A stretch of 64,000 nt of DNA from Squalus acanthias (Eukaryota): positions 62,001 to 126,000 of the forward strand of contig JASTWF010000088.1 of assembly GCA_030390025.1 (NCBI GenBank), in the 5' to 3' direction. Shown here one piece after another: positions 25,063 through 64,000 of the stretch; positions within the stretch are counted from its first letter, which is position 1; each line of letters begins with the position of its first letter. The notes below the pieces were generated by a model that did no database searches, was not told where the DNA came from, and saw nothing but the letters and a program-made list of their open reading frames with translations. The position numbers and the translations under genes are program-made.

Positions 25063-25241
25063 TTTATTTATCCTTCCATTGATCCCTGCAATGAGTTATG
25101 AACTCAAAGTGCCAACAAACTTATCAGGCAACATCATGCCTGGAGGTAAAGCAGCCTGCAGCAGTAGAAATGCATCCTTGTCTGTCAAGCTGTGCGCCTG
25201 CTATAGCAATCGAACTTTATTTAATAACTGAGTTGGGTCTC

Positions 25242-28776: not shown

Positions 28777-28879
28777 CTTATTACTCTAAATTAACAACGT
28801 CCCAAAGGCTATATCGCCAACCTAACTATTTGTTGCTTGTAGATTCTGTTCTTCCTGTGAGGGTGTAATAATACAATTG

Positions 28880-29161
28880 TTAGTTTGGTTCTCCGATCAC
28901 AACCATTTGGATTTCCTCCCTTACTACCGGTCGGAGTTGATGTTGGCGGGACTGTTCCCATACATACTTCAGGATATAACCTAAGGTGTATCCTATTAGA
29001 AAAATGCATATAGTCCAAACCAGCGCTTGTACCAGCGCCCATTCGGATTCTTTATACTGTCTGGCATACTCTTCACTTTCTGTGAACGGTATTTGTTCTG
29101 GTGTAGCCATTTCTATGTTTGTGAAGGGTTGTAGGCTTTTAACTGTGTCCAGTGCTTCCAT
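28880..29161 (-). CDS. Putative ERV accessory single-pass membrane protein (76-93 aa)
   Basis: ATGs at 29161 and 29110 in good Kozak context; hydrophobic WALVQALVWTICIFLIGYTLGYILKYVW; fills the pol-env gap. Confidence 0.55.
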   Translation of the reverse strand: MEALDTVKSLQPFTNIEMATPEQIPFTESEEYARQYKESEWALVQALVWTICIFLIGYTLGYILKYVWEQSRQHQLRPVVREEIQMVVIGEPN

Positions 29162-39241: not shown

Positions 39242-40913
39242 TTAGAACTGCAGTCTGATGAGGTGGTCATGGACTGCCCTTCCGGAAGGCCAATTGAGTG
39301 GCTGCCTCCTCCCTCGCTCCTGTTCCTCCTCCTCCTGCTCCATGTCCTCCTCATCTTCCTCTACCACCTCCTCATCCTGCTTCTCTACCTTTTCCTCCTC
39401 CTGAGGTGGTCCCACAATCCCTGCTGGCAAGGGCTGGGCCCACATGATGACCAAGTTGTGGAGCATGCAGCAGACCATCACAAAATGGGACACCCGCTCA
39501 GCCGAGTACTGGAGGGCTCCTCCCAAGTGGTCAAGGCAGCAGAACCGTTGCTTGAGCACCTCGATGGTCTGCTCAATGATGTTCCTGGTGGCGGTATGGC
39601 TCTCATTATATGATTGCTGAGTAGGAGTGTTGGGGTTGCGGAGGGGAGTCATGAGCCAGGTGGAGAGCGGATAGCCCTTGTCTCTGACCAGCTAGCCGCA
39701 AGCTTGATGTGGTGGCTGGAAGAGTGCTGGCACACCAGTCTGGCGAAGGATGAAGGCATCGTGGCTGCTGCCAGGTTAGCTGTCTGTGGTTGCACACACA
39801 CTCCACATTAAGTGAGTGGTAGCCTTTGCGGTTATGGAAGATCTGAGGGTTGTTATGCGGTGCCCGCAAAGCCACATGGGTGCAGTCAATGGCACCCTGC
39901 ACCATGGGGAAGCCCGCTATCCTGGCAAAGCCACATGCACATTTGTCCTGCTTCTCTCTGGTGATGGGGAAGGAAATGTCGTCCCTTCTCCTACTGTAGA
40001 GAGCCTCTGTGACCTCCGGGATGCAGCGATGGACGGTGAACTGCGAGATGTTAGCTATATCTCCTGTTGCAGACTGGAAGGATCTGGTGGTGAAGAAATC
40101 GAGGGCGACGATGACCTTGACTGCCACTGAAAGAGCTGTGGTCACCCTGATCTGAGGCTCAAGGTCTGGTTGCAGGAGGTGGCAGAGTTCTGTGACCACC
40201 TCCTTGCTGAAGCGGAGCCTTCTAATACACTGCTCCTGGCTTAATTGGAGGTAGGAGAAGTGCTGTCGGAATACCCTCGGAGGGTAAGGCCTTCTGTTGA
40301 GAGCCCTGATGGCCCTCCTCCTCCCTCTGACCACATGTTCCAATCTTTCTCGCTGCCTCCGCTCCCTCTGCCGTAGATCCTGGAGGGTGAGGTCGACTGT
40401 CAGTACAGCCCCCATTAATGTAACCAAGTGTAGCACTTTGATATATTGTGAGAATAAATGTAACTAATTTTTAGTAGCCACAACACTCCAGAGACTAAAC
40501 AACCTTTAAATGATTGCATTCAACTGTTGCACAATGTGAAACTGACACGGAAGCAGTGAAACAGCACGAACTTGAGAGCTGCAACTCATGATCCCTTTAA
40601 GTAGCGCTCCTGGAGCTGGCTACCGACTGCTTCATGCCTCCTCTCCCTGTTGCTGCCGGGGCGAGGCGCTAAGGCAGGGGGGCGACAATGAATTTTGCAG
40701 ATCGGGCGCCCAGTGAACATTGCACGCTCACTGACGTCACGATCTGCCTGGTGCTAAAGCCCCAGGCGCTAACTGTTAGTGGCAGCACTAAGGGGCGACT
40801 GGATTTGACGTGCAGCGCTGGATTCGCCTCGCCCCGGTACTACTGCATCAGCGCACCATTAGCGCCCCTGTCAGGTGCTAATGGGAGGAGCTAACCAACT
40901 GAATTTTTCCCCC
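39242..40913 (-). mobile_element. Harbinger transposon A, decayed HARBI1-like transposase
   Basis: GFPMVQGAIDCTHV, NRKGYHSLN and [16 protein letters not shown], frameshifted; terminal gggggaaaaatt at about 40902-40913. Confidence 0.85.
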
Positions 40914-44970: not shown

Positions 44971-45999
44971 AAGCATTAAGGCACAAGAGTGGGTTTAACG
45001 TCAGGGGAGGGGACAGGAAGGGAGCAAGGAATGGAGACAGTATACTTAGATGGAAAGTGGGAAGGGCTTGTGTTGTGAGGGGGAAGTGGTATGAGAGAAG
45101 GCAAGGAGAGAGTGGACAAGTACAAATAATCATTTAAAAGATTAAAAGGAATGTTGGTCTTTATCTCGAGGGCTGGAATACAAAGGGGTGGAAGTTCTGT
45201 TACAGCTGTACAGAGCTCTGGTCAGACCCCATCTAGAGCAGTGTGTTTAGTTCTGGGCACCGCACCTCAGGAAGGATATAGTGGCTTGGGAAAGGGTGCG
45301 GTGGAGATTTACCAGAATGATACTGGGCCTAGCTAAGGTGGCCATCAACAGGTCCAGAATGGACACAGCCGATTGGGGTGTTTGCTCCGACTGCCTGCTC
45401 CTCTTACATGGCTATGTCTGTGCCTGGGTGTCCCTAGAGAGGTATTTACAGGGAATATCCAGGAGGTAAAAGAGTTAAATTATGAGACAGGTTGCATAGA
45501 CTAGGCTTATATTCCCTTGAATATAGAAGATTAAGGGGTGATATAATTGAGGTGTTCAAGATGATTAAACGATTTGATAGGGTAGAGATAAATTATTTCC
45601 TCTGGTGGGAGAGTCCAGAACAAGGGGGCACAGCCTATAAATTGGAGCTAGGCCGTTCAGGGGTGATATCAGGAAGCACTTCTTCACACAAAAATAGCAG
45701 AAATCTGGAACTCTCTCTTCCCACAAAACTGTCACAGCTGGGGGGTCAATTGAAAATTTCAAAACTGTGATTTATAGATTTTTGTTATGCAAGGGTATTA
45801 AGGGTTACGGGACCACAGCAGGTAGAGATCAGCCATGTTCTAATTGAATGGCGGAATAGGCTTGAGGACTGAAAGGCCCACTCCTGTTCCTGTGTAAATG
45901 TGATTCGATGGATCGAATGGCCTGTCTCTGTTGTAACTTCTACTCTTTTTGGCTACCAGTTAGGATGATTAAATCATCACTCAGAATCACTTAAACCAT

Positions 46000-46345
46000 A
46001 AGTGCCCCCTTTTTAAAGGGGCACAAACAATAAGTTCCAAATTACAATAAAACTAACATAAACGCTTATCAAATTAAAATGTTATTCCCTGTATCCATGA
46101 TGCTCTCCAGCCCCTCCTGTGCCCACCAGTTGCGGAAGGCCTCAAGTGTGTCGGCAGACACTGCCTGCTCCATCTCCAGGGACACCTGGGCACGGACACT
46201 GCCGCGGAACAGAGGCAGCAGTCGGAGCAAACAGTCAGTGGCATCTAACCTGGACCTGTTAATGGCCACCTTGGCCAGGCACAGGAGCAGTCCCACGCGG
46301 AGATCCCTCGGCCTGCCTGCCTGCCTCCCTCCACACCGGGTGCGG
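46000..46345 (-). mobile_element. Tx1-clade LINE 3' fragment (a similar + strand piece lies at about 45325-45440)
   Basis: LLLCLAKVAINRSR...VSLEMEQAVS..FRNWW, homologous to the ORF2 C-terminus at 56700-56966. Confidence 0.75.
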
Positions 46346-49195: not shown

Positions 49196-49803
49196 GAATC
49201 ATAGAAAGTTACAGCACGGAAGGAGGCCATTTCGGCCCATCGTGTCCGTGCCGGCGAACAAAGAGCTATCCAGCCTAATCCCACTTCCCAGCTCTTGGTC
49301 TGTAGCCCTGCAGGTTAGAGCATCCCAAGTGCACATCCAAGTACTTTTTAAATGTGGTTAGGGTTCCTGCCTCTACCACCCTTTCAGGCAGTGGGTTCCA
49401 GACCCCCACAACCCTCTGGGTGAAGAAATTTCCACTCAAATCCCCTCTAAACCTTTCACCAATTACTTTAAATCTGTGCCCCCTGGTTTTTGACCCCTCT
49501 GCTAAGGGAAATAGGTCCTTTCTATCCACTTTATCTATGCCCCTCATAATTTTATACACCTCAATAAGGTCTCCCCTCAGCCTCCTCTGTTCCAAGGAAA
49601 ACAGACCCAGCCTATCCAGTCTTTCCTCATAGCTAAGATTCTCTACTCCCGGCAACACCCTTGTAAATCTCCTCTGTACCCTCTCTAGTGCAATCACATC
49701 TTTCCTGTAATGTGGTGACCAGAACTGCATGCAGCACTCTAGCTGAGGCATAACTAGTGTTTTATACAGTTGAAGCATAACCCCCCTGCTCTTGTAGTCT
49801 ATG
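49195..49803 (-). mobile_element. CR1 LINE 3' fragment
   Basis: LQLYKTLVMPQLECC...WNPLPERVV. Confidence 0.85.
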
Positions 49804-49906
49804 ATGCGGAGATGCCGGTGTTGGACTGGGGTGGACAAATGTGAGAAGTGGCACAACACCAGGTTATAGTCCAACAGCTTTATTTGAAATCACAAGCTTT
49901 CGGAGC
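49804..49906 (-). mobile_element. Terminal segment of a Penelope-type repeat (the Tx1 target), cut within its hammerhead motif
   Basis: - strand gctcc-GAAA-GCTT-gtgatttcaaataaagctgttggactataacctggtgttg...cagtccaacaccggcatc. Confidence 0.6.
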
Positions 49907-50883
49907 TGCTGACTGAGGAGCAGAAGCAGCAGAGTGGTGGTCTCTGTGGCCAGGAAGAGGAGAAGGAGAAGGAGACCAGACAGCAGACCACCACCAACAA
50001 CCAACAACTACAACTGAGGTGCCTGGAGAGAGAGGACAGGAGAGGAGAGGAGAAAGAAAAGGGAAGGCCAAGGCCATCAACAACAGAGGAGAGGCCTTTC
50101 CACACTGCCTCCTCAATTGGCCTCCATTTTAGGAGAGGGAGAGAGGGGAGAAAACAACACAACATCCATCATCTGTTTGGAAGGAGGAAGAAGGAAGGAA
50201 AGAACAGCTACAGGTGGGTGTGATTCTGGGGCACTCTCCCAGAGACTTTGTTTTGTAGGTGGGGGGAGGAAAGAAGAAAAAGAAGAAGGCCGGAACATCC
50301 AAGGGGTGTGTGTGTGTGTGTGTGGCTTCTGTAAAAGCTAGGCCGCACACACCATATTAAACACCCCTTTCCCATTGCCTGACCTGGGGCAGCTGGAGCT
50401 GCCTAGGTGAAGTTCCCCAATTAATTATATCCAATTGGGCATCGTTAAGACCTGGTGCAGGACTGAGCCTGGGCATCTCCAGCTATCCCAGGTGAAGACA
50501 TCTTCTCCCCCCACCAGAAGACCACCACCAAAGACTTTTTTACATCGGAGAGTGCACCCCCCTGCCAACACCCACCCACCCACCATCCTGAGTGGCGACC
50601 CTGCCCTTGCGGCTTCCCTCCTTCCCACCCCCCTCTCTCTCTCTCTCTCTTTGTCTCTTGTCTCTCTCTGCCTCTCTCTCTCTAAGAGGCACCTCATCTA
50701 TTTTTAATTAAGTACCCATTGAGCAGAGGGGAGAAGGCCCCTCTCCCAATTCAATCAACTAAAGGGAGAGGTGTGCCTTCAATTTAAGAGCTCCCTCTGC
50801 TCAGGGAAAAAAAAAAACCGAGGCCATTAACACCTTCAGGCCTGTGACTTGGGGTGAGTGTAGCCCTTAAAGAACCCTCCATT

Positions 50884-53041
50884 ATGGCGAGTACATCTTC
50901 GTCGGTGGCGGGGGCAGCGAGGACGTACGCGAGCGTGGCAGCCGCGGCCACGGCCGCAGCCACGAGTCCTCCTGTTACCCCGTCACCTTTTACCCTCCTT
51001 ACGAGGAAGAATGGGGTCAAGAGCTACACTCACCCCAACATGACTATAGAGGCGTGCGTTAAAGCCATGGCTGGGGTTGTCGGCCCTTCAGCCATCGTCG
51101 CCGCCTCTAAAATGTACGGCAAGGCTGTGTTCTTCCTGGGGTCGGAGCGGGCGGTGTCCCTGGCCATCGAGAAGGGGCTCACCGTGGGCGGGACCTTCCT
51201 GCCGGTGGACCCCCTTGAGGCCACCGCGCAAAGGATTGTGGTTTCCAACGTCCCGCCCTTTGTTCCGGGTGAGCTCCTCCTCCCCCACCTACGTCAACTG
51301 GGGGAGGTGAGGTCGGGGATCACACCCATCCCGCTCGGCTTCCGGGAAGCCAGCCTTCGGCACGTCTTCTCCTTCCGGCGCCAGCTTTTCGTCCGGCTGG
51401 CGCGGGAGGAGGACGCGGACGGCGCGTTCACGGTGCTCCACGGGGGGACCGCCCACCGCGTCTTCTGGACCTCGGACGGCGTGCGGTGCTACGCCTGTAA
51501 GGAGGTGGGGCACGTCCGCAAAAACTGCCCCGCCTCCAAGGCCGCCACGACACCTGGCGCGGCCGGGGTTGGCGCCGCCGCCCCCCCTCCCCCTGATACT
51601 GTCCGCGCGTCGACGGCGACGGATGCGCGGTCGAAATCGGAGGCCAACTCCACCACGGCCTCCGGCGGGGAGGAGGGAGAGCGTCCGGGGGGAAGGAAGG
51701 CGCGTAGGAAAAATAAACACATAAGGGCGGATCCCCTCGCGGAGGAAACATCTGAATTGGCCGAACTCACGCCCGAGTATATCGCGGAGTTGGTCGGGAC
51801 GCATGAGACTGGGGGGATCCTCGTGCCCGGGCCCGTGACCGTGACCGCAACTGCTAAGGCAGCTGAATCAAGACCTGCGGCCGGGCTCGGGCCCGAGGGG
51901 CCCAAGAAACCCAGTCGTCGGAAAGGGGCAGAGAGGGAGGCCCCAGCAGACATGGAGGCCTCCCCCTCTCCGGGCCCCAATTTGTTAAAAAGAAAGCTCC
52001 GCCCCCAGCAGGAGGACTGCGAGGAGGAAGGTCCCTCCGCAAAAGGGGGGCAGTCGCCCGCCGCGGGTGCTGCGCCCCACCCCACCACCGTCATCGTCGC
52101 GCGCGATCGGCAGGGGTCGTCTGTCCCTCGGGAGGGTGAGGCAGCCGAGTCTGTCCGACCTGTGCCTCCCGGGGATGGGGAAGAGACCCTGCCCGTGGGG
52201 GGGGGCGCGGAACAACCCGCGGAAGAAAATGTAGAAACTGAACCGTTGCTCCTCGCCGGGTCGGGCGTCCTGGGGACTGGGGCGGGCGAGGCCAAAGAGG
52301 CTGAAGCCAAGCCCGCCTTTTATAACCCAGACATCTCCCAGGGACTGCTCGACCTGGTGGAGGAGTGTAGCAATCCCCAGCCCGCTGGGTCGGAGGTTGG
52401 TGGCGGGGAGACGGAAAGCCCCCTGACTCCGTCTCTGTTGTTGGCGCCGGACGTGCTGGAGGAATTTGGGATTATTTTCTCCCCGGTTTCTCCGGTCGCC
52501 CCGGCGCCTGAGGCGGGGGGGGGGCCCCGAACCGCCGCCGCCGCCTCCCGGCCCGGCGCCCCTGAAGGAGCCCAGGGTGGACTCCTCTGCCACCGATCCT
52601 GGGGGTGGGATCGTGACGGAGGCGGGGCCGGCCGGTGCGGCCGAGCCGTTCGCTGCACCCTGTGTGACGGACGGGTTGGCCGCCGGTGACGACCTCCCGG
52701 AGGAGGACGGGGACTCGGTGGGGGGCGCTGAGGAAGATTTGGAGTCCATCAGCAGCGAGGCGATGGACGCCCTCGTGCCCTTCACCGACTCTCCCCTCAT
52801 CCCCGTAGGGGAACTCCGGGATTTTATGGCCGTGAGCCAGGGTCGTCACAAGAAGATCCGGCTGGCCCTCGACAAGTGGTCGGAGCTGACGCTGCTCGTC
52901 GTGTCCGTCCGCGCCGCCGTTAAAATCATGGGCGCGGACAAGGACGTTGACCGGCTCGAGCTGCGTCGGCTCAAGACGTTCCACACTGGGCTGCTGAGGG
53001 AGTGGCGGTCGTCAGTGACCGCCCTCCCTCCCCTCCGTTAG
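50884..53041 (+). CDS. Tx1 ORF1 (CCHC knuckle), about 718 aa, with a +1 G in the run at 52515-52524
   Basis: IVAASKMYGKAVFFL, SNVPPF, SFRRQ and CYACKEVGHVRKNC. Confidence 0.85.
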
Positions 53042-53066
53042 GTAGAGGTTGCACTATGCTTCTGAG

Positions 53067-56000
53067 ATGAAGATAACCATAGCCAGCCTCAACATCAACG
53101 GCAGCAGGGAGGCGCGCCGTAGATTCAATAACTTCTCGGTCCTTCGGGATGGGAAATATGCGGTGTGCTTCCTGCAAGAAACCCACACCGTTCCGGGAGA
53201 CGAGGCCACGTGGCTCCTGGAGTGGCAAGGAGGGGTCAGCATGAGTCACCTCTCCAACAATTCCTGCGGGGTGGCTGTCTTGCTGGCCCCGCTTTTTCAG
53301 CCGGAGATCTTGAGGGTCAAGGAGCACGTGCCGGGCCGCTTGCTCCAGGTCACTGTTCGCCTGGGAGGCGTGCCGCTCCATTTAGTGAACGTGTACGCCC
53401 CCCGGACCGGTGCGCAGCAAGTGCGCTTCTTCGGAGAAGTGTCCGCTCTTCTGGGCTCCATCGACGTGGGCGAGTGCGTCATCCTCGGGGGGGATTTCAA
53501 TTGTACCCTCGAGGCGCGGGACCGGTCGGGTCCCCCGCGAAGCCCGGCGGCGATGGAGAAGTTGCGGGACCTGGTCGGGTCCTTCGACTTGGTGGACGTC
53601 TGGCGAAATCTCCATCCCGACTCCAGCGCCTTCACGAGCGTGAGGTCTGGAGGAGGAAGGTCCAGAATCGACCGCCTTTACATTTCCCGGGCGTACGTCT
53701 CCTGCGTTCCGGCGGCTTCCATGCGGCCGGTGCCGTGCACGGACCACCACCTGGTGTGGGCGGAGCTCGCTCCGCTGCGCGCGCGGGGGGGGTCCGCGTA
53801 CTGGCATTTTAACAACCTGCTGCTGGAGGACGCGCGGTTCCGGGATTCGTTTCGCCGGTTCTGGGCCGACTGGAGAAGGAAGCGGGGAGGCTTCCCCTCC
53901 TTGAGGCTATGGTGGGACGTGGGCAAGGCTCACGTCCGCGTCTTCTGTCAGGAGTACGCGAAGGGGTCGACCAAGAGGCGGGAGGCCCGGGTCGGGCGAT
54001 TGGAGAAAGAAGTGCTCGACCTGGAGTCCCGTCTCGGTCAAGTCGTCGAGGACCCGGCCCTGCGGAAGGTGTACGAAGAGAAGAAGGGCGCGCTGAAGGA
54101 CCTGCAGCTGGTCGGGTCCCGAGGCGCGTACGTGAGGTCGCGGATCCAGCTCCTGCGGGACCTGGACCGCGGCTCCCCCTTCTTCTACTCGCTGGAAAAA
54201 AGACGGGGGGTCCGTAAGCAGCTCTTGGAGCTGCTGGCCGACGACGGATCTCTGGTCTCGGATCCGGAGGGCATCAGCGCGGAGGCCCGGGCCTATTACG
54301 GGGCTCTGTTCTCTTCGGATCCGTCCAGCGAGGATGCGCGCAGAGTTTTGTGGGAGGACCTGCCGAAGGTCGGCCCGGAGGGCGCCGAGAATCTAGAAGC
54401 TCCGCTAAGCCTGGCGGAGCTGACCGGCGCCCTGCGCCAGCTCTCGAGGGGCAAGTCCCCGGGGCTGGACGGGCTGACCGTGGAGTTCCACAGGGCGTTC
54501 TGGGACGTCTTGGGGGACGACTACGCGCGGGTCCTGGGGGAAAGTCTGGCGACCGGGGAGATGCCCCTCTCTTGGCGCAGGGCGGTCATCGTCCTGCTGC
54601 CCAAGAAGGGCGATCTCCGCCTACTTAAGAACTGGCGCCCGGTCTCCCTCCTCAGCACGGACTACAAAATTTTCGCCAGGGCTATGTCTGCTCGCCTTGG
54701 CACCGTGCTGGCCCGCATGATCCACCCCGACCAGTCCTACACGGTCCCGGGCCGGAGTATCCACGATAACATCCATCTGGTCCGGGACCTGGTCCACCAT
54801 TCCCAGAGGGCTGGTCTGTCGGTCGCCTTCCTTTCCCTGGATCAGGAGAAGGCGTTCGACAGGGTGGATCACGAGTATCTTTTCGGGACTCTGCGCGCGT
54901 TCGGGTTCGGGACGCATTTCGTCGCCCGGATCCGACTTCTGTACGCCGCCGCGGAGTGTCTGATTAAAGTTAACGGGTCTTTGACGGCGCCCCTTCGCTT
55001 CGGGAGGGGGGTGCGTCAGGGATGCCCCATGTCCGGTCAGTTATACGCCGTTTGCGTGGAGCCTTTCCTGCGCCTCTTGCGGAAGAGGTTGACGGGACTG
55101 GCTCTGCAAGGGCCGGGCGTGGAGGTGGTCCTCTCGGCTTACGCCGATGACGTGCTCCTCGCGGTCACGGATCCCGTCGACTTGCGGAGGATGCGAGAAT
55201 GCCAGCAGATTTACTCGGACGCATCCTCCGCCAAGATCAACTGGGAGAAATGTTCTGGACTCCTGGTGGGCCCATGGCGGGTGGACTCCCTGCCGGAGGA
55301 GTTCGGGCCTTTCGCCTGGAGCACCACGCACCTCCTCTACCTGGGAGTCTACCTCAGCCCGGCCGAGGACGCCTGGCCGGCGAACTGGCAAGAGCTGGAG
55401 GCCAAAGTCACCGCTCGCCTAGGACGCTGGACAGGACTGCTCCGAGTGTTGTCCTACAGGGGTCGAGCGCTGGTCATAAACCAGCTGGTGGCCGCCATGT
55501 TGTGGTACCGGTTGGTCACTTTGATCCCTCCCCCTGCGTTTGTCGCCAAGATGCAGAAGAAGCTCGTCGACTTCTTCTGGGACAAAAGGAAGCACTGGGT
55601 CTCTGCCGCGGTTTTGAGTCTCCCGCTTAGGGAGGGCGGTCAGGCGCTGGTGTGCCTTCGCACCCAGGCGGCGACTTTCCGTCTTCAGACGCTGCAGAGA
55701 TACCTGTACGTGGAGAATCCTCCTAGGTGGCGTGCGCTGGCGACGTATTTCTTCCGCCAGCTGCACGGCCTCAATTACGACACGCAGCTCCTGTTTGTGA
55801 GAGTGGGTGGCACGCGTGCCAGCCTGCGGGAGCTGCCTGTCTTCTACCAGGAACTGCTATGGGTTTGGAACAGCGTCGCCTCCGAGCGCAGTTCTCCCCC
55901 GTCAGGAGCGGCGGCCGTCCTTCGGGAGCCGCTGTTCAGGAATCCGCACCTCCACGACCGCGGGTTCGGCTGGCTGGCGGAGGGCAGGGCTGTGCCCGGT

Positions 56001-56966
56001 AAGGTGACCAGAGTCGGGGACCTGCTCGATGGCGGAGGAGCGGGCTGGATGGCGCCGGAGGAGTTGGCGAGGCGCATGTCTTGGGTCAACGTCCGGCTCG
56101 CGGTCAAAGCCATCGAGTCGCTAAAAGTGGCACTGGGCCCCGTCTCCACTAGGTGTGTCGAGGAGGCTCAAGCACGTGGGGCGATCCCGTCCGAACTGAC
56201 CCCCGTTCGGACGGAATTCCTTATCGGCGCCCGGCCCCGAATCCTCCCTCGGGAGCCGCCGCCTCACCACTTGAGCCTTCTCGGAGAAATGCCCTCCGTG
56301 CCCTTTCAATCCGCACGGAGGCGTTTCCTGTACGGGCTGCTCCTGCACACTCTCCACTTTGCCATCTTCGTCTGCCGTCCGGACACGCCTTGGCGTACCA
56401 TCCTGCCGTCCGGCGGAGGCGAAGGTCCCCATTGGAAGGCTCTCTACGCGGGAGTCTTCCCTTGTTCTATTGGGGACTTGGCCTGGAGGGTGTTGCACGG
56501 AGCAGTCCCGTGCAATAGGATTTTAAGTAGGTTTACGGACTCCCAGGCTGCTTGCCATTTTTGCGGCCTGGAGGAGTCCGTTTATCACATTTATGTTGAA
56601 TGTGAGAGGTTGCAGCCCCTCTTTCATTATTTGAAGGGGCTGCTCCTCAATTTCTGGTTGCACTTCAGCCCCACGCTCCTGATCTACGGTCACCCGGTGC
56701 GGAGGGGAGCGGGTAGGTCGGAGGACCTCCTCGTAGGACTGCTCCTGGGCCTGGCCAAGAAAGCCATTAATTGGTCCAGGCAGCGGGCGGTCGAGGGGGT
56801 CGTTCGGCCCGATTGCCTGCCTCTCTTCCGCGGCCATGTTCGCGCCCGGGTGGCCCTGGAGATGGAGCACGCGGTGTCCGCCGGCACGCTTGAGTTTTTC
56901 CGCGACCGGTGGGCACCGCGGGGACTGGAGTGCATCGTCACCCCGGACTTTCAAATTTTAATTTGA
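53067..56966 (+). CDS. Tx1 ORF2 (APE endonuclease-RT-zinc finger), 1299 aa, intact
   Basis: SLNING, LQETH, GGDFN, RIDR, TDH, GVRQGCP, YADD and CHFCGLEESVYHIYVEC. Confidence 0.95.
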   Translation: MKITIASLNINGSREARRRFNNFSVLRDGKYAVCFLQETHTVPGDEATWLLEWQGGVSMSHLSNNSCGVAVLLAPLFQPEILRVKEHVPGRLLQVTVRLGGVPLHLVNVYAPRTGAQQVRFFGEVSALLGSIDVGECVILGGDFNCTLEARDRSGPPRSPAAMEKLRDLVGSFDLVDVWRNLHPDSSAFTSVRSGGGRSRIDRLYISRAYVSCVPAASMRPVPCTDHHLVWAELAPLRARGGSAYWHFNNLLLEDARFRDSFRRFWADWRRKRGGFPSLRLWWDVGKAHVRVFCQEYAKGSTKRREARVGRLEKEVLDLESRLGQVVEDPALRKVYEEKKGALKDLQLVGSRGAYVRSRIQLLRDLDRGSPFFYSLEKRRGVRKQLLELLADDGSLVSDPEGISAEARAYYGALFSSDPSSEDARRVLWEDLPKVGPEGAENLEAPLSLAELTGALRQLSRGKSPGLDGLTVEFHRAFWDVLGDDYARVLGESLATGEMPLSWRRAVIVLLPKKGDLRLLKNWRPVSLLSTDYKIFARAMSARLGTVLARMIHPDQSYTVPGRSIHDNIHLVRDLVHHSQRAGLSVAFLSLDQEKAFDRVDHEYLFGTLRAFGFGTHFVARIRLLYAAAECLIKVNGSLTAPLRFGRGVRQGCPMSGQLYAVCVEPFLRLLRKRLTGLALQGPGVEVVLSAYADDVLLAVTDPVDLRRMRECQQIYSDASSAKINWEKCSGLLVGPWRVDSLPEEFGPFAWSTTHLLYLGVYLSPAEDAWPANWQELEAKVTARLGRWTGLLRVLSYRGRALVINQLVAAMLWYRLVTLIPPPAFVAKMQKKLVDFFWDKRKHWVSAAVLSLPLREGGQALVCLRTQAATFRLQTLQRYLYVENPPRWRALATYFFRQLHGLNYDTQLLFVRVGGTRASLRELPVFYQELLWVWNSVASERSSPPSGAAAVLREPLFRNPHLHDRGFGWLAEGRAVPGKVTRVGDLLDGGGAGWMAPEELARRMSWVNVRLAVKAIESLKVALGPVSTRCVEEAQARGAIPSELTPVRTEFLIGARPRILPREPPPHHLSLLGEMPSVPFQSARRRFLYGLLLHTLHFAIFVCRPDTPWRTILPSGGGEGPHWKALYAGVFPCSIGDLAWRVLHGAVPCNRILSRFTDSQAACHFCGLEESVYHIYVECERLQPLFHYLKGLLLNFWLHFSPTLLIYGHPVRRGAGRSEDLLVGLLLGLAKKAINWSRQRAVEGVVRPDCLPLFRGHVRARVALEMEHAVSAGTLEFFRDRWAPRGLECIVTPDFQILI

Positions 56967-58062
56967 TTTATTAAGTTTCATTTCAAGTTTTAATTGATTT
57001 ACCGTAAATTTGTGTTGTCCAACCAAAAAGAGCAACACCAGGTTATAGTCCAACAGCTTTATTTGAAATCACAAGCTTTCGGAGCTGCTGACTGAGGAGC
57101 AGAAGCAGCAGAGTGGTGGTCTCTGTGGCCAGGAAGAGGAGAAGGAGAAGGAGACCAGACAGCAGACCACCACCAACAACCAACAACTACAACTGAGGTG
57201 CCTGGAGAGAGAGGACAGGAGAGGAGAGGAGAAAGAAAAGGGAAGGCCAAGGCCATCAACAACAGAGGAGAGGCCTTTCCACACTGCCTCCTCAATTGGC
57301 CTCCATTTTAGGAGAGGGAGAGAGGGGAGAAAACAACACAACATCCATCATCTGTTTGGAAGGAGGAAGAAGGAAGGAAAGAACAGCTACAGGTGGGTGT
57401 GATTCTGGGGCACTCTCCCAGAGACTTTGTTTTGTAGGTGGGGGGAGGAAAGAAGAAAAAGAAGAAGGCCGGAACATCCAAGGGGTGTGTGTGTGTGTGT
57501 GTGGCTTCTGTAAAAGCTAGGCCGCACACACCATATTAAACACCCCTTTCCCATTGCCTGACCTGGGGCAGCTGGAGCTGCCTAGGTGAAGTTCCCCAAT
57601 TAATTATATCCAATTGGGCATCGTTAAGACCTGGTGCAGGACTGAGCCTGGGCATCTCCAGCTATCCCAGGTGAAGACATCTTCTCCCCCCACCAGAAGA
57701 CCACCACCAAAGACTTTTTTACATCGGAGAGTGCACCCCCCTGCCAACACCCACCCACCCACCATCCTGAGTGGCGACCCTGCCCTTGCGGCTTCCCTCC
57801 TTCCCACCCCCCTCTCTCTCTCTCTCTCTTTGTCTCTTGTCTCTCTCTGCCTCTCTCTCTCTAAGAGGCACCTCATCTATTTTTAATTAAGTACCCATTG
57901 AGCAGAGGGGAGAAGGCCCCTCTCCCAATTCAATCAACTAAAGGGAGAGGTGTGCCTTCAATTTAAGAGCTCCCTCTGCTCAGGGAAAAAAAAAAACCGA
58001 GGCCATTAACACCTTCAGGCCTGTGACTTGGGGTGAGTGTAGCCCTTAAAGAACCCTCCATT

Positions 58063-60214
58063 ATGGCGAGTACATCTTCGTCGGTGGCGGGGGCAGCGAG
58101 GACGTACGCGAGCGTGGCAGCCGCGGCCACGGCCGCAGCCACGAGTCCTCCTGTTACCCCGTCACCTTTTACCCTCCTTACGAGGAAGAATGGGGTCAAG
58201 AGCTACACTCACCCCAACATGACTATAGAGGCGTGCGTTAAAGCCATGGCTGGGGTTGTCGGCCCTTCAGCCATCGTCGCCGCCTCTAAAATGTACGGCA
58301 AGGCTGTGTTCTTCCTGGGGTCGGAGCGGGCGGTGTCCCTGGCCATCGAGAAGGGGCTCACCGTGGGCGGGACCTTCCTGCCGGTGGACCCCCTTGAGGC
58401 CACCGCGCAAAGGATTGTGGTCTCCAACGTCCCGCCCTTTGTTCCGGGTGAGCTCCTCCTCCCCCACCTACGTCAACTGGGGGAGGTGAGGTCGGGGATC
58501 ACACCCATCCCGCTCGGCTTCCGGGAAGCCAGCCTTCGGCACGTCTTCTCCTTCCGGCGCCAGCTTTTCGTCCGGCTGGCGCGGGAGGAGGACGCGGATG
58601 GCGCGTTCACGGTGCTCCACGGGGGGACCGCCCACCGCGTCTTCTGGACCTCGGACGGCGCGCGGTGCTACGCCTGTAAGGAGGTGGGGCACGTCCGCAA
58701 AAACTGCCCCGCCTCCAAGGCCGCCACGACACCTGGCGCGGCCGGGGTTGGCGCCGCCGCCCCCCCTCCCCCTGATACTGTCCGCGCGTCGACGGCGACG
58801 GATGCGCGGTCGAAATCGGAGGCCAACGCCACCACGGCCTCCGGCGGGGAGGAGGGAGAGCGTCCGGGGGGAAGGAAGGCGCGTAGGAAAAATAAACACA
58901 TAAGGGCGGATCCCCTCGCGGAGGAAACATCTGAATTGGCCGAACTCACGCCCGAGTATATCGCGGAGTTGGTCGGGACGCATGAGACTGGGGGGGTCCT
59001 CGTGCCCGGGCCCGTGACCGCAACCGCCGAGGCGGCTAAATCAAGACCTGCGGCCGGGCTCGGGCCCGAGGGGCCCAAGAAACCCAGTCGTCGGAAGGGG
59101 GCAGAGAGGGAGGCCCCAGCAGACATGGAGGCCTCCCCCTCTCCGGGCCCCAACTTGTTAAAAAGAAAGCTCCGCCCCCAGCAGGAGAACTGCGAGGAGG
59201 AAGGTCCCTCCGCAAAAGGGGGGCAGTCGCCCGCCGCGGGTGCTGCGCCCCACCCCACCACCGTCATCGTCGCGCGCGATCGGCAGGGGTCGTCTGTCCC
59301 TCGGGAGGGTGAGACAGACGAGTCTGTCCGACCTGTGCCTCCCGGGGATGGGGAAGAGACCCTGCCCGTGGGGGGGGGGCGCGGAACAACCCGCGGAGGG
59401 AAATGTAGTACCGGAACCGTTGCTCCTCGCCGGGTCGGGCGTCCTGGGGACTGGGGCGGGCGAGGCCAAAGAGGCTGAAGCCGAGCCCGCCTTTTATAAC
59501 CCAGACATCTCCCAGGGACTGCTCGACCTGGTGGAGGAGTGTAGCAATCCCCAGCCTGCTGGGTCGGAGGTTGGTGGCGGGGAGACGGAAAGCCCCCTGA
59601 CTCCGTCTCTGTTGTTGGCGCCGGACGTGCTGGAGGAATTTGGGATTATTTTCTCCCCGGTTTCTCCGGTCGCCCCGGCGCCTGAGGCGGGGGGGGGCCC
59701 CGAACCGCCGCCGCCGCCTCCCGGCCCGGCGCCCCTGAAGGAGCCCAGGGTGGACTCCTCTGCCACCGATCCTGGGGGTGGGATCGTGACGGAGGCGGGG
59801 CCGGCCGGTGCGGCCGAGCCGTTCGCTGCACCCCGTGCGACGGACGGGTCGGCCGTCGGTGACGACCTCCCGGAGGAGGACGGGGACTCGGTGTTGGGCA
59901 ACGAGGACGATTTGGAGTCCATCGGCAGCGAGGTGATGGACGCCCTCGTGCCCTTCACTGACTCTCCCCTCATCCCCGTAGGGGAACTCCGGGATTTTAT
60001 GGCCGTGAGCCAGGGTCGTCACAAGAAGATCCGGCTGGCCCTCGACAAGTGGTCGGAGCTGACGCTGCTCGTCGTGTCCGTCCGCGCCGCCGTTAAAATC
60101 ATGGGCGCGGACAAGGACGTTGACCGGCTCGAGCTGCGTCGGCTCAAGACGTTCCACACTGGGCTGCTGAGGGAGTGGCGGTCGTCAGTGACCGCCCTCC
60201 CTCCCCTCCGTTAG
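58063..60214 (+). CDS. Tx1 ORF1, copy 2, with a +1 G in the run at 59370-59379
   Basis: Homologous to copy 1, with the frameshift in a different G run. Confidence 0.85.
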
Positions 60215-60239
60215 GTAGAGGTTGCACTATGCTTCTGAG

Positions 60240-63200
60240 ATGAAGATAACCATAGCCAGCCTCAACATCAACGGCAGCAGGGAGGCGCGCCGTAGATTCA
60301 ATAACTTCTCGGTCCTTCGGGACGGGAAATATGCGGTGTGCTTCCTGCAAGAAACCCACACCGTTCCGGGAGACGAGGCCACGTGGCTCCTGGAGTGGCA
60401 AGGAGGGGTCAGCATGAGTCACCTCTCCAACAATTCCTGCGGGGTGGCTGTCTTGCTGGCCCCGCATTTTCAGCCGGAGATCTTGAGGGTCAAGGAGCAC
60501 GTGCCGGGCCGCTTGCTCCAGGTCACTGTTCGCCTGGGAGGCGTGCCGCTCCATTTAGTGAACGTGTACGCCCCCCGGACCGGTGCGCAGCAAGTGCGCT
60601 TCTTCGGAGAAGTGTCCGCTCTTCTGGGCTCCATCGACGTGGGCGAGTGCGTCATCCTCGGGGGGGATTTCAATTGTACCCTCGAGGCGCGGGACCGGTC
60701 GGGTCCCCCGCGAAGCCCGGCGGCGATGGAGAAGTTGCGGGACCTGGTCGGGTCCTTCGACTTGGTGGACGTCTGGCGAAATCTCCATCCCGACTCCAGC
60801 GCCTTCACGAGCGTGAGGTCTGGAGGAGGAAGGTCCAGAATCGACCGCCTTTACATTTCCCGGGCGTACGTCTCCTGCGTTCCGGCGGCTTCCATGCGGC
60901 CGGTGCCGTGCACGGACCACCACCTGGTGTGGGCGGAGCTCGCTCCGCTGCGCGCGCGGGGGGGGTCCGCGTACTGGCATTTTAACAACCTGCTGCTGGA
61001 GGACGCGCGGTTCCGGGATTCGTTTCGCCGGTTCTGGGCCGACTGGAGAAGGAAGCGGGGAGGCTTCCCCTCCTTGAGGCTATGGTGGGACGTGGGCAAG
61101 GCTCACGTCCGCGTCTTCTGTCAGGAGTACGCGAAGGGGTCGACCAAGAGGCGGGAGGCCCGGGTCGGGCGATTGGAGAAAGAAGTGCTCGACCTGGAGT
61201 CCCGTCTCGGTCAAGTCGTCGAGGACCCGGCCCTGCGGAAGGTGTACGAAGAGAAGAAGGGCGCGCTGAAGGACCTGCAGCTGGTCGGGTCCCGAGGCGC
61301 GTACGTGAGGTCGCGGATCCAGTTCCTGCGGGACCTGGACCGCGGCTCCCCCTTCTTCTACTCGCTGGAAAAAAGACGGGGGGTCCGTAAGCAGCTCTTG
61401 GGGCTGCTGGCCGACGACGGATCTCTGGTCTCGGATCCGGAGGGCATCAGCGCGGAGGCCCGGGCCTATTACGGGGCTCTGTTCTCTTCGGATCCGTCCA
61501 GCGAGGATGCGCGCAGAGTTTTGTGGGAGGACCTGCCGAAGGTCGGCCCGGAGGGCGCCGAGAATTTAGAAGCTCCGCTAAGCCTGGCGGAGCTGACCGG
61601 CGCCCTGCGCCAGCTCTCGAGGGGCAAGTCCCCGGGGCTGGACGGGCTGACCGTGGAGTTCCACAGGGCGTTCTGGGACGTCTTGGGGGACGACTACGCG
61701 CGGGTCCTGGGGGAAAGTCTGGCGACCGGGGAGATGCCCCTCTCTTGGCGCAGGGCGGTCATCGTCCTGCTGCCCAAGAAGGGCGATCTCCGCCTACTTA
61801 AGAACTGGCGCCCGGTCTCCCTCCTCAGCACGGACTACAAAATTTTCGCCAGGGCTATGTCTGCTCGCCTTGGCACCGTGCTGGCCCGCATGATCCACCC
61901 CGACCAGTCCTACACGGTCCCGGGCCGGAGTATCCACGATAACATCCATCTGGTCCGGGACCTGGTCCACCATTCCCAGAGGGCTGGTCTGTCGGTCGCC
62001 TTCCTTTCCCTGGATCAGGAGAAGGCGTTCGACAGGGTGGATCACGAGTATCTTTTCGGGACTCTGCGCGCATTCGGGTTCGGGACGCATTTCGTCGCCC
62101 GGATCCGACTTCTGTACGCCGCCGCGGAGTGTCTCATTAAAGTTAACGGGTCTTTGACGGCGCCCCTTCGCTTCGGGAGGGGGGTGCGTCAGGGATGCCC
62201 CATGTCCGGTCAGTTATACGCCGTTTGCGTGGAGCCTTTCCTGCGCCTCTTGCGGAAGAGGTTGACGGGACTGGCTCTGCAAGGGCCGGGCGTGGAGGTG
62301 GTCCTCTCGGCTTACGCCGATGACGTGCTCCTCGCGGTCACGGATCCCGTCGACTTGCGGAGGATGCGAGAATGCCAGCAGATTTACTCGGACGCATCCT
62401 CCGCCAAGATCAACTGGGAGAAATGTTCTGGACTCCTGGTGGGCCCATGGCAGGTGGACTCCCTGCCGGAGGAGTTCGGGCCTTTCGCCTGGAGCACCAC
62501 GCACCTCCTCTACCTGGGAGTCTACCTCAGCCCGGCCGAGGACGCCTGGCCGGCGAACTGGCAAGAGCTGGAGGCCAAAGTCACCGCTCGCCTAGGACGC
62601 TGGACAGGACTGCTCCGAGTGTTGTCCTACAGGGGTCGAGCGCTGGTCATAAACCAGCTGGTGGCCGCCATGTTGTGGTACCGGTTGATCACTTTGATCC
62701 CTCCCCCTGCGTTTGTCGCCAAGATGCAGAAGAAGCTCGTCGACTTCTTCTGGGACAAAAGGAAGCACTGGGTCTCTGCCGCGGTTTTGAGTCTCCCGCT
62801 TAGGGAGGGCGGTCAGGCGCTGGTGTGCCTTCGCACCCAGGCGGCGACTTTCCGTCTTCAGACGCTGCAGAGATACCTGTACGTGGAGAATCCTCCTAGG
62901 TGGCGTGCGCTGGCGACGTATTTCTTCCGCCAGCTGCACGGCCTCAATTACGACACGCAGCTCCTGTTTGTGAGAGTGGGTGGCACGCGTGCCAGCCTGC
63001 GGGAGCTGCCTGTCTTCTACCAGGAACTGCTATGGGTTTGGAACAGCGTCGCCTCCGAGCGCAGTTCTCCCCCGTCAGGAGCGGCGGCCGTCCTTCGGGA
63101 GCCGCTGTTCAGGAATCCGCACCTCCACGACCGCGGGTTCGGCTGGCTGGCGGAGGGCAGGGCTGTGCCCGGTAAGGTGACCAGAGTCGGGGACCTGCTC

Positions 63201-64000
63201 GATGGCGGAGGAGCGGGCTGGATGGCGCCGGAGGAGTTGGCGAGGCGCATGTCTTGGGTCAACGTCCGGCTCGCGGTCAAAGCCATCGAGTCGCTAAAAG
63301 TGGCACTGGGCCCCGTCTCCACTAGGTGTGTCGAGGAGGCTCAAGCACGTGGGGCGATCCCGTCCGAACTGACCCCCGTTCGGACGGAATTCCTTATCGG
63401 CGCCCGGCCCCGAATCCTCCCTCGGGAGCCGCCGCCTCACCACTTGAGCCTTCTCGGAGAAATGCCCTCCGTGCCCTTTCAATCCGCACGGAGGCGTTTC
63501 CTGTACGGGCTGCTCCTGCACACTCTCCACTTTGCCATCTTCGTCTGCCGTCCGGACACGCCTTGGCGTACCATCCTGCCGTCCGGCGGAGGCGAAGGTC
63601 CCCACTGGAAGGCTCTCTACGCGGGAGTCTTCCCTTGTTCTATTGGGGACTTGGCCTGGAGGGTGTTGCACGGAGCAGTCCCGTGCAATAGGATTTTAAG
63701 TAGGTTTACGGACTCCCAGGCTGCTTGCCATTTTTGCGGCCTGGAGGAGTCCGTTTATCACATTTATGTTGAATGTGAGAGGTTGCAGCCCCTCTTTCAT
63801 TATTTGAAGGGGCTGCTCCTCAATTTCTGGTTGCACTTCAGCCCCACGCTCCTGATCTACGGTCACCCGGTGCGGAGGGGAGCGGGTAAGTCGGAGGACC
63901 TCCTCGTAGGACTGCTCCTGGGCCTGGCCAAGAAAGCCATTAATTGGTCCAGGCAGCGGGCGGTCGAGGGGGTCGTTCGGCCCGATTGCCTGCCTCTCTT
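60240..64000 (+). CDS. Tx1 ORF2, copy 2 (appears open to the window end)
   Basis: ATG at 60240; near-identical to 53067 onward. Confidence 0.85.
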   Translation, partial: MKITIASLNINGSREARRRFNNFSVLRDGKYAVCFLQETHTVPGDEATWLLEWQGGVSMSHLSNNSCGVAVLLAPHFQPEILRVKEHVPGRLLQVTVRLGGVPLHLVNVYAPRTGAQQVRFFGEVSALLGSIDVGECVILGGDFNCTLEARDRSGPPRSPAAMEKLRDLVGSFDLVDVWRNLHPDSSAFTSVRSGGGRSRIDRLYISRAYVSCVPAASMRPVPCTDHHLVWAELAPLRARGGSAYWHFNNLLLEDARFRDSFRRFWADWRRKRGGFPSLRLWWDVGKAHVRVFCQEYAKGSTKRREARVGRLEKEVLDLESRLGQVVEDPALRKVYEEKKGALKDLQLVGSRGAYVRSRIQFLRDLDRGSPFFYSLEKRRGVRKQLLGLLADDGSLVSDPEGISAEARAYYGALFSSDPSSEDARRVLWEDLPKVGPEGAENLEAPLSLAELTGALRQLSRGKSPGLDGLTVEFHRAFWDVLGDDYARVLGESLATGEMPLSWRRAVIVLLPKKGDLRLLKNWRPVSLLSTDYKIFARAMSARLGTVLARMIHPDQSYTVPGRSIHDNIHLVRDLVHHSQRAGLSVAFLSLDQEKAFDRVDHEYLFGTLRAFGFGTHFVARIRLLYAAAECLIKVNGSLTAPLRFGRGVRQGCPMSGQLYAVCVEPFLRLLRKRLTGLALQGPGVEVVLSAYADDVLLAVTDPVDLRRMRECQQIYSDASSAKINWEKCSGLLVGPWQVDSLPEEFGPFAWSTTHLLYLGVYLSPAEDAWPANWQELEAKVTARLGRWTGLLRVLSYRGRALVINQLVAAMLWYRLITLIPPPAFVAKMQKKLVDFFWDKRKHWVSAAVLSLPLREGGQALVCLRTQAATFRLQTLQRYLYVENPPRWRALATYFFRQLHGLNYDTQLLFVRVGGTRASLRELPVFYQELLWVWNSVASERSSPPSGAAAVLREPLFRNPHLHDRGFGWLAEGRAVPGKVTRVGDLLDGGGAGWMAPEELARRMSWVNVRLAVKAIESLKVALGPVSTRCVEEAQARGAIPSELTPVRTEFLIGARPRILPREPPPHHLSLLGEMPSVPFQSARRRFLYGLLLHTLHFAIFVCRPDTPWRTILPSGGGEGPHWKALYAGVFPCSIGDLAWRVLHGAVPCNRILSRFTDSQAACHFCGLEESVYHIYVECERLQPLFHYLKGLLLNFWLHFSPTLLIYGHPVRRGAGKSEDLLVGLLLGLAKKAINWSRQRAVEGVVRPDCLPL

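What the first reader, a model, noticed from the sequence alone, without database searches (positions are those of the whole stretch)
49804..57085. Tx1 LINE apparently site-specific for a Penelope element's hammerhead-ribozyme tail, with a 53-bp target duplication and tandem stacking
Seen: each Tx1 copy is preceded by the same 53 bp (caacaccaggttatagtcc...aagctttcggagc, 49854-49906 and 57033-57085). Before copy 1 this continues upstream as a longer repeat (49804-49853). Before copy 2 it directly abuts the 3' end of copy 1, with no poly-A. On the - strand it reads ...gctcc-GAAA-GCTT..., the same stem II / GAAA / palindromic stem III layout as the Penelope hammerheads at 25033-25061. Known: Tx1-clade APE elements are often sequence-specific (Xenopus Tx1L targets Tx1D; Keno targets U2 snRNA genes), and Penelope elements carry minimal hammerhead ribozymes. 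Inference: this family targets another retroelement, breaking its ribozyme at stem II, and the long duplication regenerates a target that allows tandem arrays. I do not know of a described LINE family with this target.
Basis: partly seen in the sequence, partly recalled or inferred. Interest (0 to 1): 0.85.

Follow-up and report, generated by a model that had tools for sequence, protein, structure and literature searches.

The report
LINE that lands in a ribozyme repeat
Two head-to-tail copies of a Tx1-type jumping gene sit in one spot of a very common short repeat that carries a hammerhead ribozyme motif, an apparent new target for a group of elements already known to aim at other repeats.

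Summary
The same 53 bp precede both Tx1 copies (49854-49906, 57033-57085). Copy 1 ends at 57032 with no poly-A.

Public contigs of four coded organisms show the 53 bp is an internal piece of an independent, abundant repeat. To the left it continues as in 49804-49853. To the right it supplies the missing CUGACGA half of a minimal, Penelope-type hammerhead on the minus strand. In this organism the match to the intact repeat runs 5 bases further, so the duplication is 53-58 bp.

The two copies differ in a mosaic pattern, which speaks against a plain duplication or an assembly artefact.

Best reading: a target-specific Tx1-clade LINE with staggered nicks and repeated insertion at the regenerated site.

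Not shown:
- The right flank past base 64000.
- Any link of the repeat to a Penelope coding element.

A diverged Tx1 fragment in the window (46344-45942) lies elsewhere, with a 9-bp duplication.

Other first-stage notes of this scan report the same association on other pieces of this genome. I could not check them.

Tx1 families that target other transposons, and tandem inserts sandwiching a duplication, are in print (PMC4494074). This is a new member of a known kind.

The parts
49804..49853 (-). Upstream part (U) of the hammerhead-bearing short repeat. The repeat's ribozyme sense is the minus strand. It abuts unrelated DNA at 49803.
   Evidence: Loose-end consensus before 57033 in X1 (53 contigs), X7 (15) and X16 (46) matches this stretch, 26 of 30 for X7 by my count.
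49854..49906 (-). Target stretch T, left copy, contiguous with U. The minus strand holds the helix II 3' strand, the GAAA box, the 4-base palindrome AGCU, the predicted cleavage site and 40 further bases.
49907..57032 (+). Tx1-clade LINE copy 1, full length. The first 5 bases (tgctg, 49907-49911) may belong to the target instead.
50854..52689 (+). ORF1 of copy 1, 611 codons as listed. First ATG at 50884. Carries a CCHC zinc knuckle.
53049..56966 (+). ORF2 of copy 1, 1305 codons as listed. First ATG at 53067. Holds an AP-type endonuclease, a reverse transcriptase and zf-RVT.
   Evidence: 50% identity over 99% of its length to the Xenopus Tx1 149 kDa protein (P0004).
56967..57032 (+). 3' UTR of copy 1, 66 bases, AT-rich. 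Ends CCAAAAAGAG with no poly-A.
   Evidence: The same terminal 10 bases end the diverged Tx1 fragment.
57033..57085 (-). Target stretch T, second copy, between the 3' end of copy 1 and the 5' end of copy 2.
57086..64000 (+). Tx1 copy 2, cut by the window end about 211 bases before its expected 3' end. ORF1 (58033-59862) is broken by a +1 at 59370 and a -1 at 59688, plus a 6-base deletion at 59011. ORF2 (60222 onward) is open for 1259 codons.
45942..46344 (-). Comparison piece: a 5'-truncated fragment of a diverged Tx1 family (74.5% over 251 bases). It ends CCAAAAAGAG(T), is flanked by a 9-bp duplication agaagttac (46353-46345 and 45941-45933), and does not lie in T.

Best explanation
A young Tx1-clade LINE family inserts, antisense, at one site of a very abundant short repeat. 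That repeat carries a minimal, Penelope-type hammerhead motif.

Inferred mechanism:
- The element's AP-type endonuclease nicks the bottom strand right after ...GGTGTTG, 40 bases 3' of the predicted ribozyme cleavage site. The nick primes reverse transcription from the RNA end ...CCAAAAAGAG.
- The top strand is opened 53-58 bases downstream, inside helix II or loop 2 of the hammerhead.
- Fill-in duplicates the 53-58 bases (T). Each insert is therefore flanked by T, the left junction holds a broken ribozyme half, and the right flank keeps an intact T plus the rest of the repeat.
- The left U-T junction is intact after insertion, so a second insertion at the same site gives U-T-LINE-T-LINE-T, the head-to-tail pair seen here.

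Shown: the anatomy, the clade, the independent existence and continuation of the repeat, and the hammerhead layout.
Inferred: the nick positions, the order of events, and site preference at genome scale.
For: - Clade: ORF2 has Exo_endo_phos, RVT_1 and zf-RVT, and ORF1 has a CCHC knuckle. ORF2 is 50% identical over 99% of its length to Xenopus Tx1 ORF2.
- 3' boundary: the two junctions diverge exactly at 57032/57033. The same terminal CCAAAAAGAG ends a diverged Tx1 fragment that has its own 9-bp duplication.
- T is target, not private to the LINE. Contigs carry T with other DNA to the left in X1 (53), X7 (15) and X16 (46). Their consensus matches window 49824-49853.
- Contigs also carry T with other DNA to the right: behind 57085 in X7 (7) and X16 (43), and behind 57090 in X1 (45), X6 (2) and X7 (12). 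All read ...CTCCTTCGTCAGGTG.
- On the minus strand that continuation plus T gives CUGACGA, one unpaired A, GGAGC-loop-GCUCC, GAA, the palindrome AGCU, U, and a 4-bp helix I. These match the traits listed for Penelope min-hammerheads (PMC4209133, passages).
- Copy 1 has T on both sides, and the left T runs in register into U.
- The differences between the copies are mosaic. There are 0 in the first 1000 bases, 29 in 1836 (ORF1), 9 in 359 (inter-ORF) and 11 in 3773 (ORF2); chi-square 52.8, p = 2e-11.
- One X1 contig joins T bases 1-15 to the last ~27 bases of the Tx1 tail (joint 57047 to 57015). That would be a separate, extremely 5'-truncated event at the same bottom-strand site.
- Both inferred nick sites look alike: GGTGTTG|TGCC and GCTGCTG|CTCC. 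This is my reading, with roughly 0.03 by chance.
- Precedent exists for Tx1 families that target transposons, and for tandem inserts sandwiching a duplication (PMC4494074).
Against:
- The right flank of copy 2 lies past base 64000.
- Only rows chosen by the tool were shown; 590 loose-end rows were not. Tx1 tails with other flanks cannot be excluded.
- The tool warns that contig depth is not copy number.
- The truncated-tail event rests on one contig, and I did not see how far it runs on.
- A diverged Tx1 fragment in the same window lies outside T, with a 9-bp duplication. The habit is therefore not shared by all local Tx1 lineages.
- A 53-58-bp duplication is long for a LINE.
- Full-length copies cannot tell a staggered-nick duplication from a T carried on the RNA.
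- Run X16 holds the repeat and Tx1-like ORF2 sequence but almost nothing of this tail or 5' UTR.
Confidence: 0.65

Rival explanations
1. T is a head carried on the element's RNA. It would be target sequence captured earlier by read-through or upstream initiation, as with the U1/U2 heads of some crocodilian Tx1 families. Insertion is then near-blunt at the U|T boundary. T appears twice because the RNA brings one copy, not because the nicks lie 53-58 bases apart. Site specificity still holds.
For: Some Tx1-Mar families carry target-derived U1 or U2 sequence at their 5' ends (PMC4494074, passages). Full-length copies look the same under both models. There are no differences between the two copies in T plus the first ~950 bases.
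Against: An X1 contig shows T bases 1-15 left of a 27-base tail remnant. Another shows T bases 1-40, 5 filler bases, then T again (table 5c). Both fit variable top-strand nicks, and neither fits an RNA head. Each is a single contig.
Confidence: 0.15
2. There was one chance insertion into a very abundant repeat. The unit [T + LINE] was then duplicated in tandem by unequal crossing-over or replication error. There is no site preference.
For: Only one locus is visible. The repeat is very abundant, so chance hits are not rare. The copies are 99.24% alike.
Against: The differences are strongly clustered, 38 of 49 events in 2195 bases of ORF1 plus spacer and none in the first 1000. Uniform decay after a duplication does not give this. 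The separate contig-level event lies at the same base. Unchecked notes by other first-stage readers report the same association on other pieces of this genome.
Confidence: 0.12
3. The tandem pair is an assembly artefact: a collapsed or mis-joined repeat.
For: Young repeats are hard to assemble. I have no read-level view of this locus, because contigs of low-coverage runs cannot span it (no piece spans the stretch).
Against: The two copies differ at 49 events, including frame-breaking indels in only one of them. An artefactual duplicate would be identical. There are no N runs in the window.
Confidence: 0.03

Closest known systems
Xenopus Tx1L, inserted at a fixed site of the piggyBac-type element Tx1D
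   Same: Same clade: 50% ORF2 identity over 99% of the length. A LINE that uses another mobile element as its landing site (PMC4494074, passage).
   Different: The target here is a short repeat with a hammerhead motif, not a DNA transposon. The duplication is 53-58 bp. Head-to-tail stacking is seen here.
Crocodilian Tx1-Mar families and SINEU-3, which target Mariner-N4_AMi
   Same: Tx1 lineage with a preferred site inside an abundant transposon. Tandem inserts that sandwich a target duplication are described for SINEU-3. Some families carry target-derived sequence at their 5' ends (PMC4494074, passages).
   Different: The duplication there is 16 bp (as quoted for SINEU-3) against 53-58 bp here. 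The target class differs. Here the 5' end carries an inverted, not direct, piece of the target (variants at 57093/57094).
Keno, Kibi, Koshi and other target-specific Tx1 families (U2 snRNA genes, microsatellites)
   Same: Target choice in the Tx1 clade is attributed mainly to the endonuclease (PMC4494074, passage).
   Different: Those targets are host RNA genes or simple repeats. Here the target is a retroelement-type ribozyme repeat. I did not place the family on an RT tree with them.
Minimal hammerheads of Penelope-like elements (Cervera and de la Pena 2014)
   Same: The target's motif has the two conserved boxes, the unpaired base after position 9, G10.1-C11.1, a 4-base palindrome instead of helix III, and a 4-bp helix I.
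   Different: Helix II is 5 bp, against the 6-8 bp given for most families. No RT-GIY-YIG frame is linked to this repeat in the window. No cleavage test was done and there is no Rfam match.

Membership tests
Tx1 clade of non-LTR retrotransposons | ORF2 with an N-terminal AP-type endonuclease, a reverse transcriptase and a C-terminal zinc-binding region | tested here: met
   Exo_endo_phos at 12-233 (E 1.1e-10), RVT_1 at 518-767 (E 8.5e-38), zf-RVT at 1127-1187 (24.5 bits, just under Pfam's 27.5 cut-off).
Tx1 clade of non-LTR retrotransposons | Full-length similarity of ORF2 to the type element | tested here: met
   P0004, Xenopus laevis transposon TX1 149 kDa protein, 50% identity, 99% of the query covered.
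Tx1 clade of non-LTR retrotransposons | Placement inside the clade on an RT tree with reference families | not tested
   No Repbase reference set was at hand.
Target-specific LINE | The target exists without the element, and the element interrupts it at a fixed base | tested here: met
   contigs in four runs carry T with the repeat's own continuation on both sides; both 5' junctions and the one visible 3' junction lie at the same bases.
Target-specific LINE | Most copies of the family lie at that site | tested here: inconclusive
   2 of 2 copies of this family in the window, plus one contig-level event. No genome-wide count was made, because searches were closed and searches were blank. Other readers' notes are unchecked.
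Target-specific LINE | The endonuclease nicks the target sequence specifically | not testable with these tools
   Needs a nicking assay.
Penelope-type minimal hammerhead | CUGANGA and GAAA boxes in type I order around a helix II hairpin | tested here: met
   The window gives GCUCC-GAAA. Contigs give the CUGACGA-A-GGAGC half directly adjoining it. In this locus the two halves are separated by the LINE array.
Penelope-type minimal hammerhead | Unpaired base between positions 9 and 10.1, G10.1-C11.1, palindromic 15.2-16.2 without a real helix III, and a short helix I | tested here: met
   Read against the traits listed in PMC4209133. Helix I is 4 bp (UCAC/GUGA). Helix II is 5 bp, shorter than the 6-8 bp given there.
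Penelope-type minimal hammerhead | Match to a curated covariance model | tested here: not met
   No hammerhead family was listed at gathering score or at E up to 10 on 49750-50000. Only half the motif is present there.
Penelope-like element (as owner of the target repeat) | The repeat forms the pLTR or 3' end of a unit with an RT-GIY-YIG frame | tested here: inconclusive
   No such frame lies next to 49804-49906. Notes by other readers mention Penelope copies elsewhere in the genome, but they are unchecked and not linked to this repeat.
Penelope-like element (as owner of the target repeat) | Frequent 5' truncation and tandem or inverted arrangements | tested here: inconclusive
   One X6 loose end behind 57084 is a palindrome centred in the hammerhead box. 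That fits inverted copies as described in PMC8557442.

The most novel reading that the evidence does not exclude
The long, fixed duplication may be set by base pairing rather than by protein alone.

In 9 X1 contigs and 2 X7 contigs, the first bases of the Tx1 5' end read as an exact inverted copy of the neighbouring hammerhead half, CTGACGAAGGAGCAG (variants at 57093/57094). The window's copies differ from it at 2 bases.

The RNA 5' end is therefore complementary to the target's top strand across the very place where that strand is opened. If this pairing positions second-strand cleavage or 5' joining, it would be an RNA-guided step at the 5' end of a LINE insertion. It would also explain why the array regenerates its own site.
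Probability: 0.12. Interest if true: 0.7.

Novelty: new member of a known kind. Interest (0 to 1): 0.45.

Why it matters
If the site preference holds genome-wide, three things follow.
- A Penelope-type ribozyme repeat joins the list of Tx1 targets. I found no such target in print (searches, open-access library only; Repbase could not be searched).
- It gives a natural case of a LINE with two defined nick sites more than 50 bases apart on a short, known sequence. That is convenient for studying how an AP-type endonuclease picks both strands.
- Young Tx1 arrays in this genome would mark the repeat and should be masked together with it in annotation.

It does not change the general picture of target-specific LINEs.

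Tried and rejected
- Exact search for 24 bases of T in metagenome, viral and prokaryote genome collections: 0 hits each.
- Rfam: no family at gathering score in the whole window. No hammerhead family even at E up to 10 at 49750-50000 or 24900-25150. The listed weak hits (ArcZ and others) are chance.
- A loose CTGANGA...GAAA scan gives 4 hits against 5.37 expected, so it carries no weight by itself.
- The 13-base end of T at 2 mismatches is also not above chance alone: 2 found, 1.73 expected.
- Folding 49804-49911 (-) gives z = -0.81, no unusual stability.
- A functional hammerhead on the LINE's own (+) strand at the 5' junction was rejected. There is a CUGA-type box but no following GCUCC-GAAA.
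- The idea that T belongs to the LINE's 3' end was rejected. The diverged fragment ends at the same CCAAAAAGAG and then has its own flank.
- The search of earlier findings by sequence was blank.
- My naming of 49275-49803 (-) as CR1-like is recalled from the look of its translation. Pfam found nothing there.
- Supplementary figures S3-S6 of PMC4494074, on the target preferences of Tx1 families, could not be seen and may hold closer precedents.
Full report
**What is there**

The window ends in two head-to-tail copies of one element.
- Copy 1 spans 49907-57032. Copy 2 starts at 57086 and is cut by the window end.
- Each copy is preceded by the same 53 bases, here called T (49854-49906 and 57033-57085). 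Aligning the two junctions shows that identity begins exactly at caacacc.
- The first 24 bases of T occur only at these two places in the window at up to 3 mismatches, with 0 expected.
- The unit is 7179 bp. The copies are 99.24% alike over 6975 aligned bases, with 45 mismatches and 5 gap openings.
- The window has no N runs.

**The element**

- ORF2 (53049-56966, first ATG 53067) carries Exo_endo_phos, RVT_1 and zf-RVT. ORF1 (50854-52689, first ATG 50884) carries a CCHC knuckle.
- ORF2 is 50% identical over 99% of its length to the Xenopus Tx1 149 kDa protein (P0004). That places it in the Tx1 clade.
- The nearest hits from cartilaginous fishes are partial gene models: Heterodontus francisci at 75% over 26% of the query, and Hemitrygon akajei at 69% over 33%. 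From this I infer that the window comes from a cartilaginous fish. The run tables give only coded names.
- The 3' UTR is 66 bases, ends CCAAAAAGAG, and has no poly-A.
- A 5'-truncated fragment of a diverged Tx1 family (74.5% over 251 bases) lies at 46344-45942 on the minus strand. It ends with the same ten bases and is flanked by a 9-bp duplication, agaagttac. This fixes the 3' terminus of copy 1 at 57032. It also shows that not all local Tx1 lineages use T.

**What T is**

I laid Logan contigs of four runs on 56583-57482 at 90% likeness. The runs were X1, X6, X7 and X16, coded organisms A, B, C and H. The numbers of contigs laid were 6345, 151, 1287 and 9863.
- Many contigs carry T with something other than the LINE on either side.
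- To the left of 57033, the loose-end consensus of 53 (X1), 15 (X7) and 46 (X16) contigs reads like window 49824-49853. For X7 the match is 26 of 30 by my count.
- To the right, the homology breaks at 57085 in X7 (7 contigs) and X16 (43), and at 57090 in X1 (45), X6 (2) and X7 (12). Every one of these rows goes on ...CTCCTTCGTCAGGTG.
- The summed contig depth jumps at the two bins that hold T. For example, X6 goes from 0 and 88 beside T to 15830 and 13980 on it. The tool warns that contig depth is not copy number, so I use this only as a sign that very high-depth contigs lie on T.
- X16 has the repeat and Tx1-like ORF2 sequence but almost nothing of this tail or 5' UTR.

T is therefore an internal piece of an independent, abundant repeat shared by several organisms. 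In organism A the shared sequence includes tgctg (57086-57090), so the duplicated stretch is 53-58 bp.

**The hammerhead**

On the minus strand, the right-hand continuation plus T reads as follows:
- a 4-base helix I strand (UCAC);
- CUGACGA;
- one unpaired A;
- GGAGC, a 3-4-base loop, GCUCC;
- GAA;
- the palindrome AGCU;
- U, the predicted cleavage site;
- GUGA.

The passages I read of Cervera and de la Pena 2014 (PMC4209133) list these traits as recurring in Penelope min-hammerheads:
- an unpaired base between positions 9 and 10.1;
- G10.1-C11.1;
- palindromic 15.2-16.2 in place of helix III;
- a 4-5-bp helix I.

All are met. Helix II, at 5 bp, is shorter than the 6-8 bp they give.

Caveats:
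- Rfam lists no hammerhead, either for the whole window at gathering score or for 49750-50000 at E up to 10. Only half the motif is there.
Its helix II is imperfect, and the pattern that finds it is not above chance (4 found, 5.37 expected).
- I could not link the repeat to a Penelope coding unit. Nothing of that kind adjoins it.
- Penelope elements are described as often 5'-truncated, tandem or inverted, with hammerheads in their terminal repeats (PMC8557442; PMC6155905). This fits a short abundant repeat of this sort.
- One X6 loose end is a palindrome centred in the hammerhead box.

**How it most likely arose**

- Copy 1 has T on both sides. Its left T runs in register into U, and its right T starts at the very base where U would end.
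- This is the picture of a target duplication. The bottom-strand nick falls after ...GGTGTTG, 40 bases 3' of the predicted ribozyme cleavage site. The top-strand nick falls 53-58 bases downstream, in helix II or loop 2.
- The two inferred sites resemble each other: GGTGTTG|TGCC and GCTGCTG|CTCC. By my estimate that is about 0.03 by chance, given the 6 possible registers.
- After insertion the U-T junction is intact. A second insertion there gives the observed pair, with the upstream copy the younger.
- In keeping with that, copy 1 has both frames open. Copy 2 has ORF1 broken by a +1, a -1 and a 6-base deletion, and its ORF2 is open for the 1259 codons visible.
- The 49 differences between the copies are not spread evenly:

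| Region | Differences | Length (bases) |
|---|---|---|
| T plus 5' UTR (first 1000 bases) | 0 | 1000 |
| ORF1 | 29 | 1836 |
| Inter-ORF spacer | 9 | 359 |
| ORF2 | 11 | 3773 |

  The chi-square is 52.8 and p = 2e-11. Such a mosaic speaks for two source RNAs, or for later conversion. It speaks against a plain duplication or an assembly artefact.
- Table 5c adds separate events in run X1. One contig joins T bases 1-15 to the last ~27 bases of the tail. Another joins T bases 1-40, five filler bases and T again. Both fit a fixed bottom-strand site with a variable top-strand site. Each is a single contig.

**What speaks against, or is missing**

- The right flank of the array lies past base 64000.
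- One search shows only the best-supported rows, and 590 loose-end rows were hidden. Tails with other flanks cannot be excluded.
- Full-length copies cannot separate a staggered-nick duplication from a T carried on the RNA as a captured head. Such heads are known in crocodilian Tx1 families (PMC4494074).
- Other first-stage notes of this scan describe the same Tx1/hammerhead-repeat association on other pieces of this genome. I treat them as leads, not support.

**An unexplained detail**

In 9 X1 contigs and 2 X7 contigs the Tx1 5' end differs from the window at 57093 and 57094. It then reads CTGACGAAGGAGCAG, an exact inverted copy of the neighbouring hammerhead half. The RNA 5' end would then be complementary to the top strand across the top-strand break. 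I cannot say whether this helps 5' joining or is a relic of an inverted copy of the repeat.

**Comparison and novelty**

The passages I read of Kojima 2015 (PMC4494074) state the following:
- many Tx1 families are target-specific;
- the known targets are Tx1D (a piggyBac element), U2 genes, microsatellites, Mariner-N4_AMi, LTR retrotransposons and Harbinger elements;
- tandem inserts sandwiching a duplication occur.

A Penelope-type ribozyme repeat as target did not turn up in my searches of the open-access library (listings and abstracts only, apart from the papers named above). Repbase and the supplements were out of reach.

I therefore rate this a new member of a known kind, of moderate interest. 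The long duplication and the inverted target piece at the 5' end are its unusual points.

Noticed in passing
window 27199-33552 (-): Endogenous retrovirus-like unit with three open frames. The first has two CCHC knuckles. The second is a 1164-codon pol with protease, RT, RNase H and integrase. The third is a 416-codon frame with a TLV_coat match. Observed only.
   Followed up: partly
window 45942-46344 (-): 5'-truncated fragment of a second, diverged Tx1 family. It has the same terminal CCAAAAAGAG and a 9-bp target duplication, and is inserted in unrelated repeat DNA.
   Followed up: yes
window 45317-45440 (+): About 125 bases similar to the ORF2 C-terminus of Tx1 (51% over 41 residues), embedded in other repeat sequence. 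Origin unclear.
   Followed up: no
window 25037-25061 (-): CTGACGA...GAAA plus an ACGT palindrome, a possible decayed minimal hammerhead of another family. Helix II is imperfect, there is no Rfam match, and the pattern is not above chance.
   Followed up: partly
window 51243-52786 versus 58422-59959: 38 of the 49 differences between the two Tx1 copies lie in ORF1 and the spacer, and none lie in the first 1000 bases. The pair is a mosaic, not an evenly diverged duplicate.
   Followed up: yes
window 49907-49925 and 57086-57104: The Tx1 5' end resembles an inverted copy of the hammerhead half that adjoins T in the intact repeat. It is exact in variant contigs of runs X1 and X7.
   Followed up: partly
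window 49275-49803 (-): A 199-codon open frame that abuts the hammerhead repeat. It looks to me like the C-terminal part of a CR1-type LINE ORF2, which is recalled. Pfam found no family.
   Followed up: no
window 39606-40436 (-): A 275-codon frame with a weak DDE_Tnp_4 match (E 4.4e-05, just under the cut-off), perhaps a Harbinger-type transposase remnant.
   Followed up: no
table 5c, run X1: A contig joins the Tx1 5' UTR at 57404 through three bases (GAT) to the start of T. This may be a short deletion derivative, or a unit made of T plus part of the 5' UTR flanked by T.
   Followed up: no
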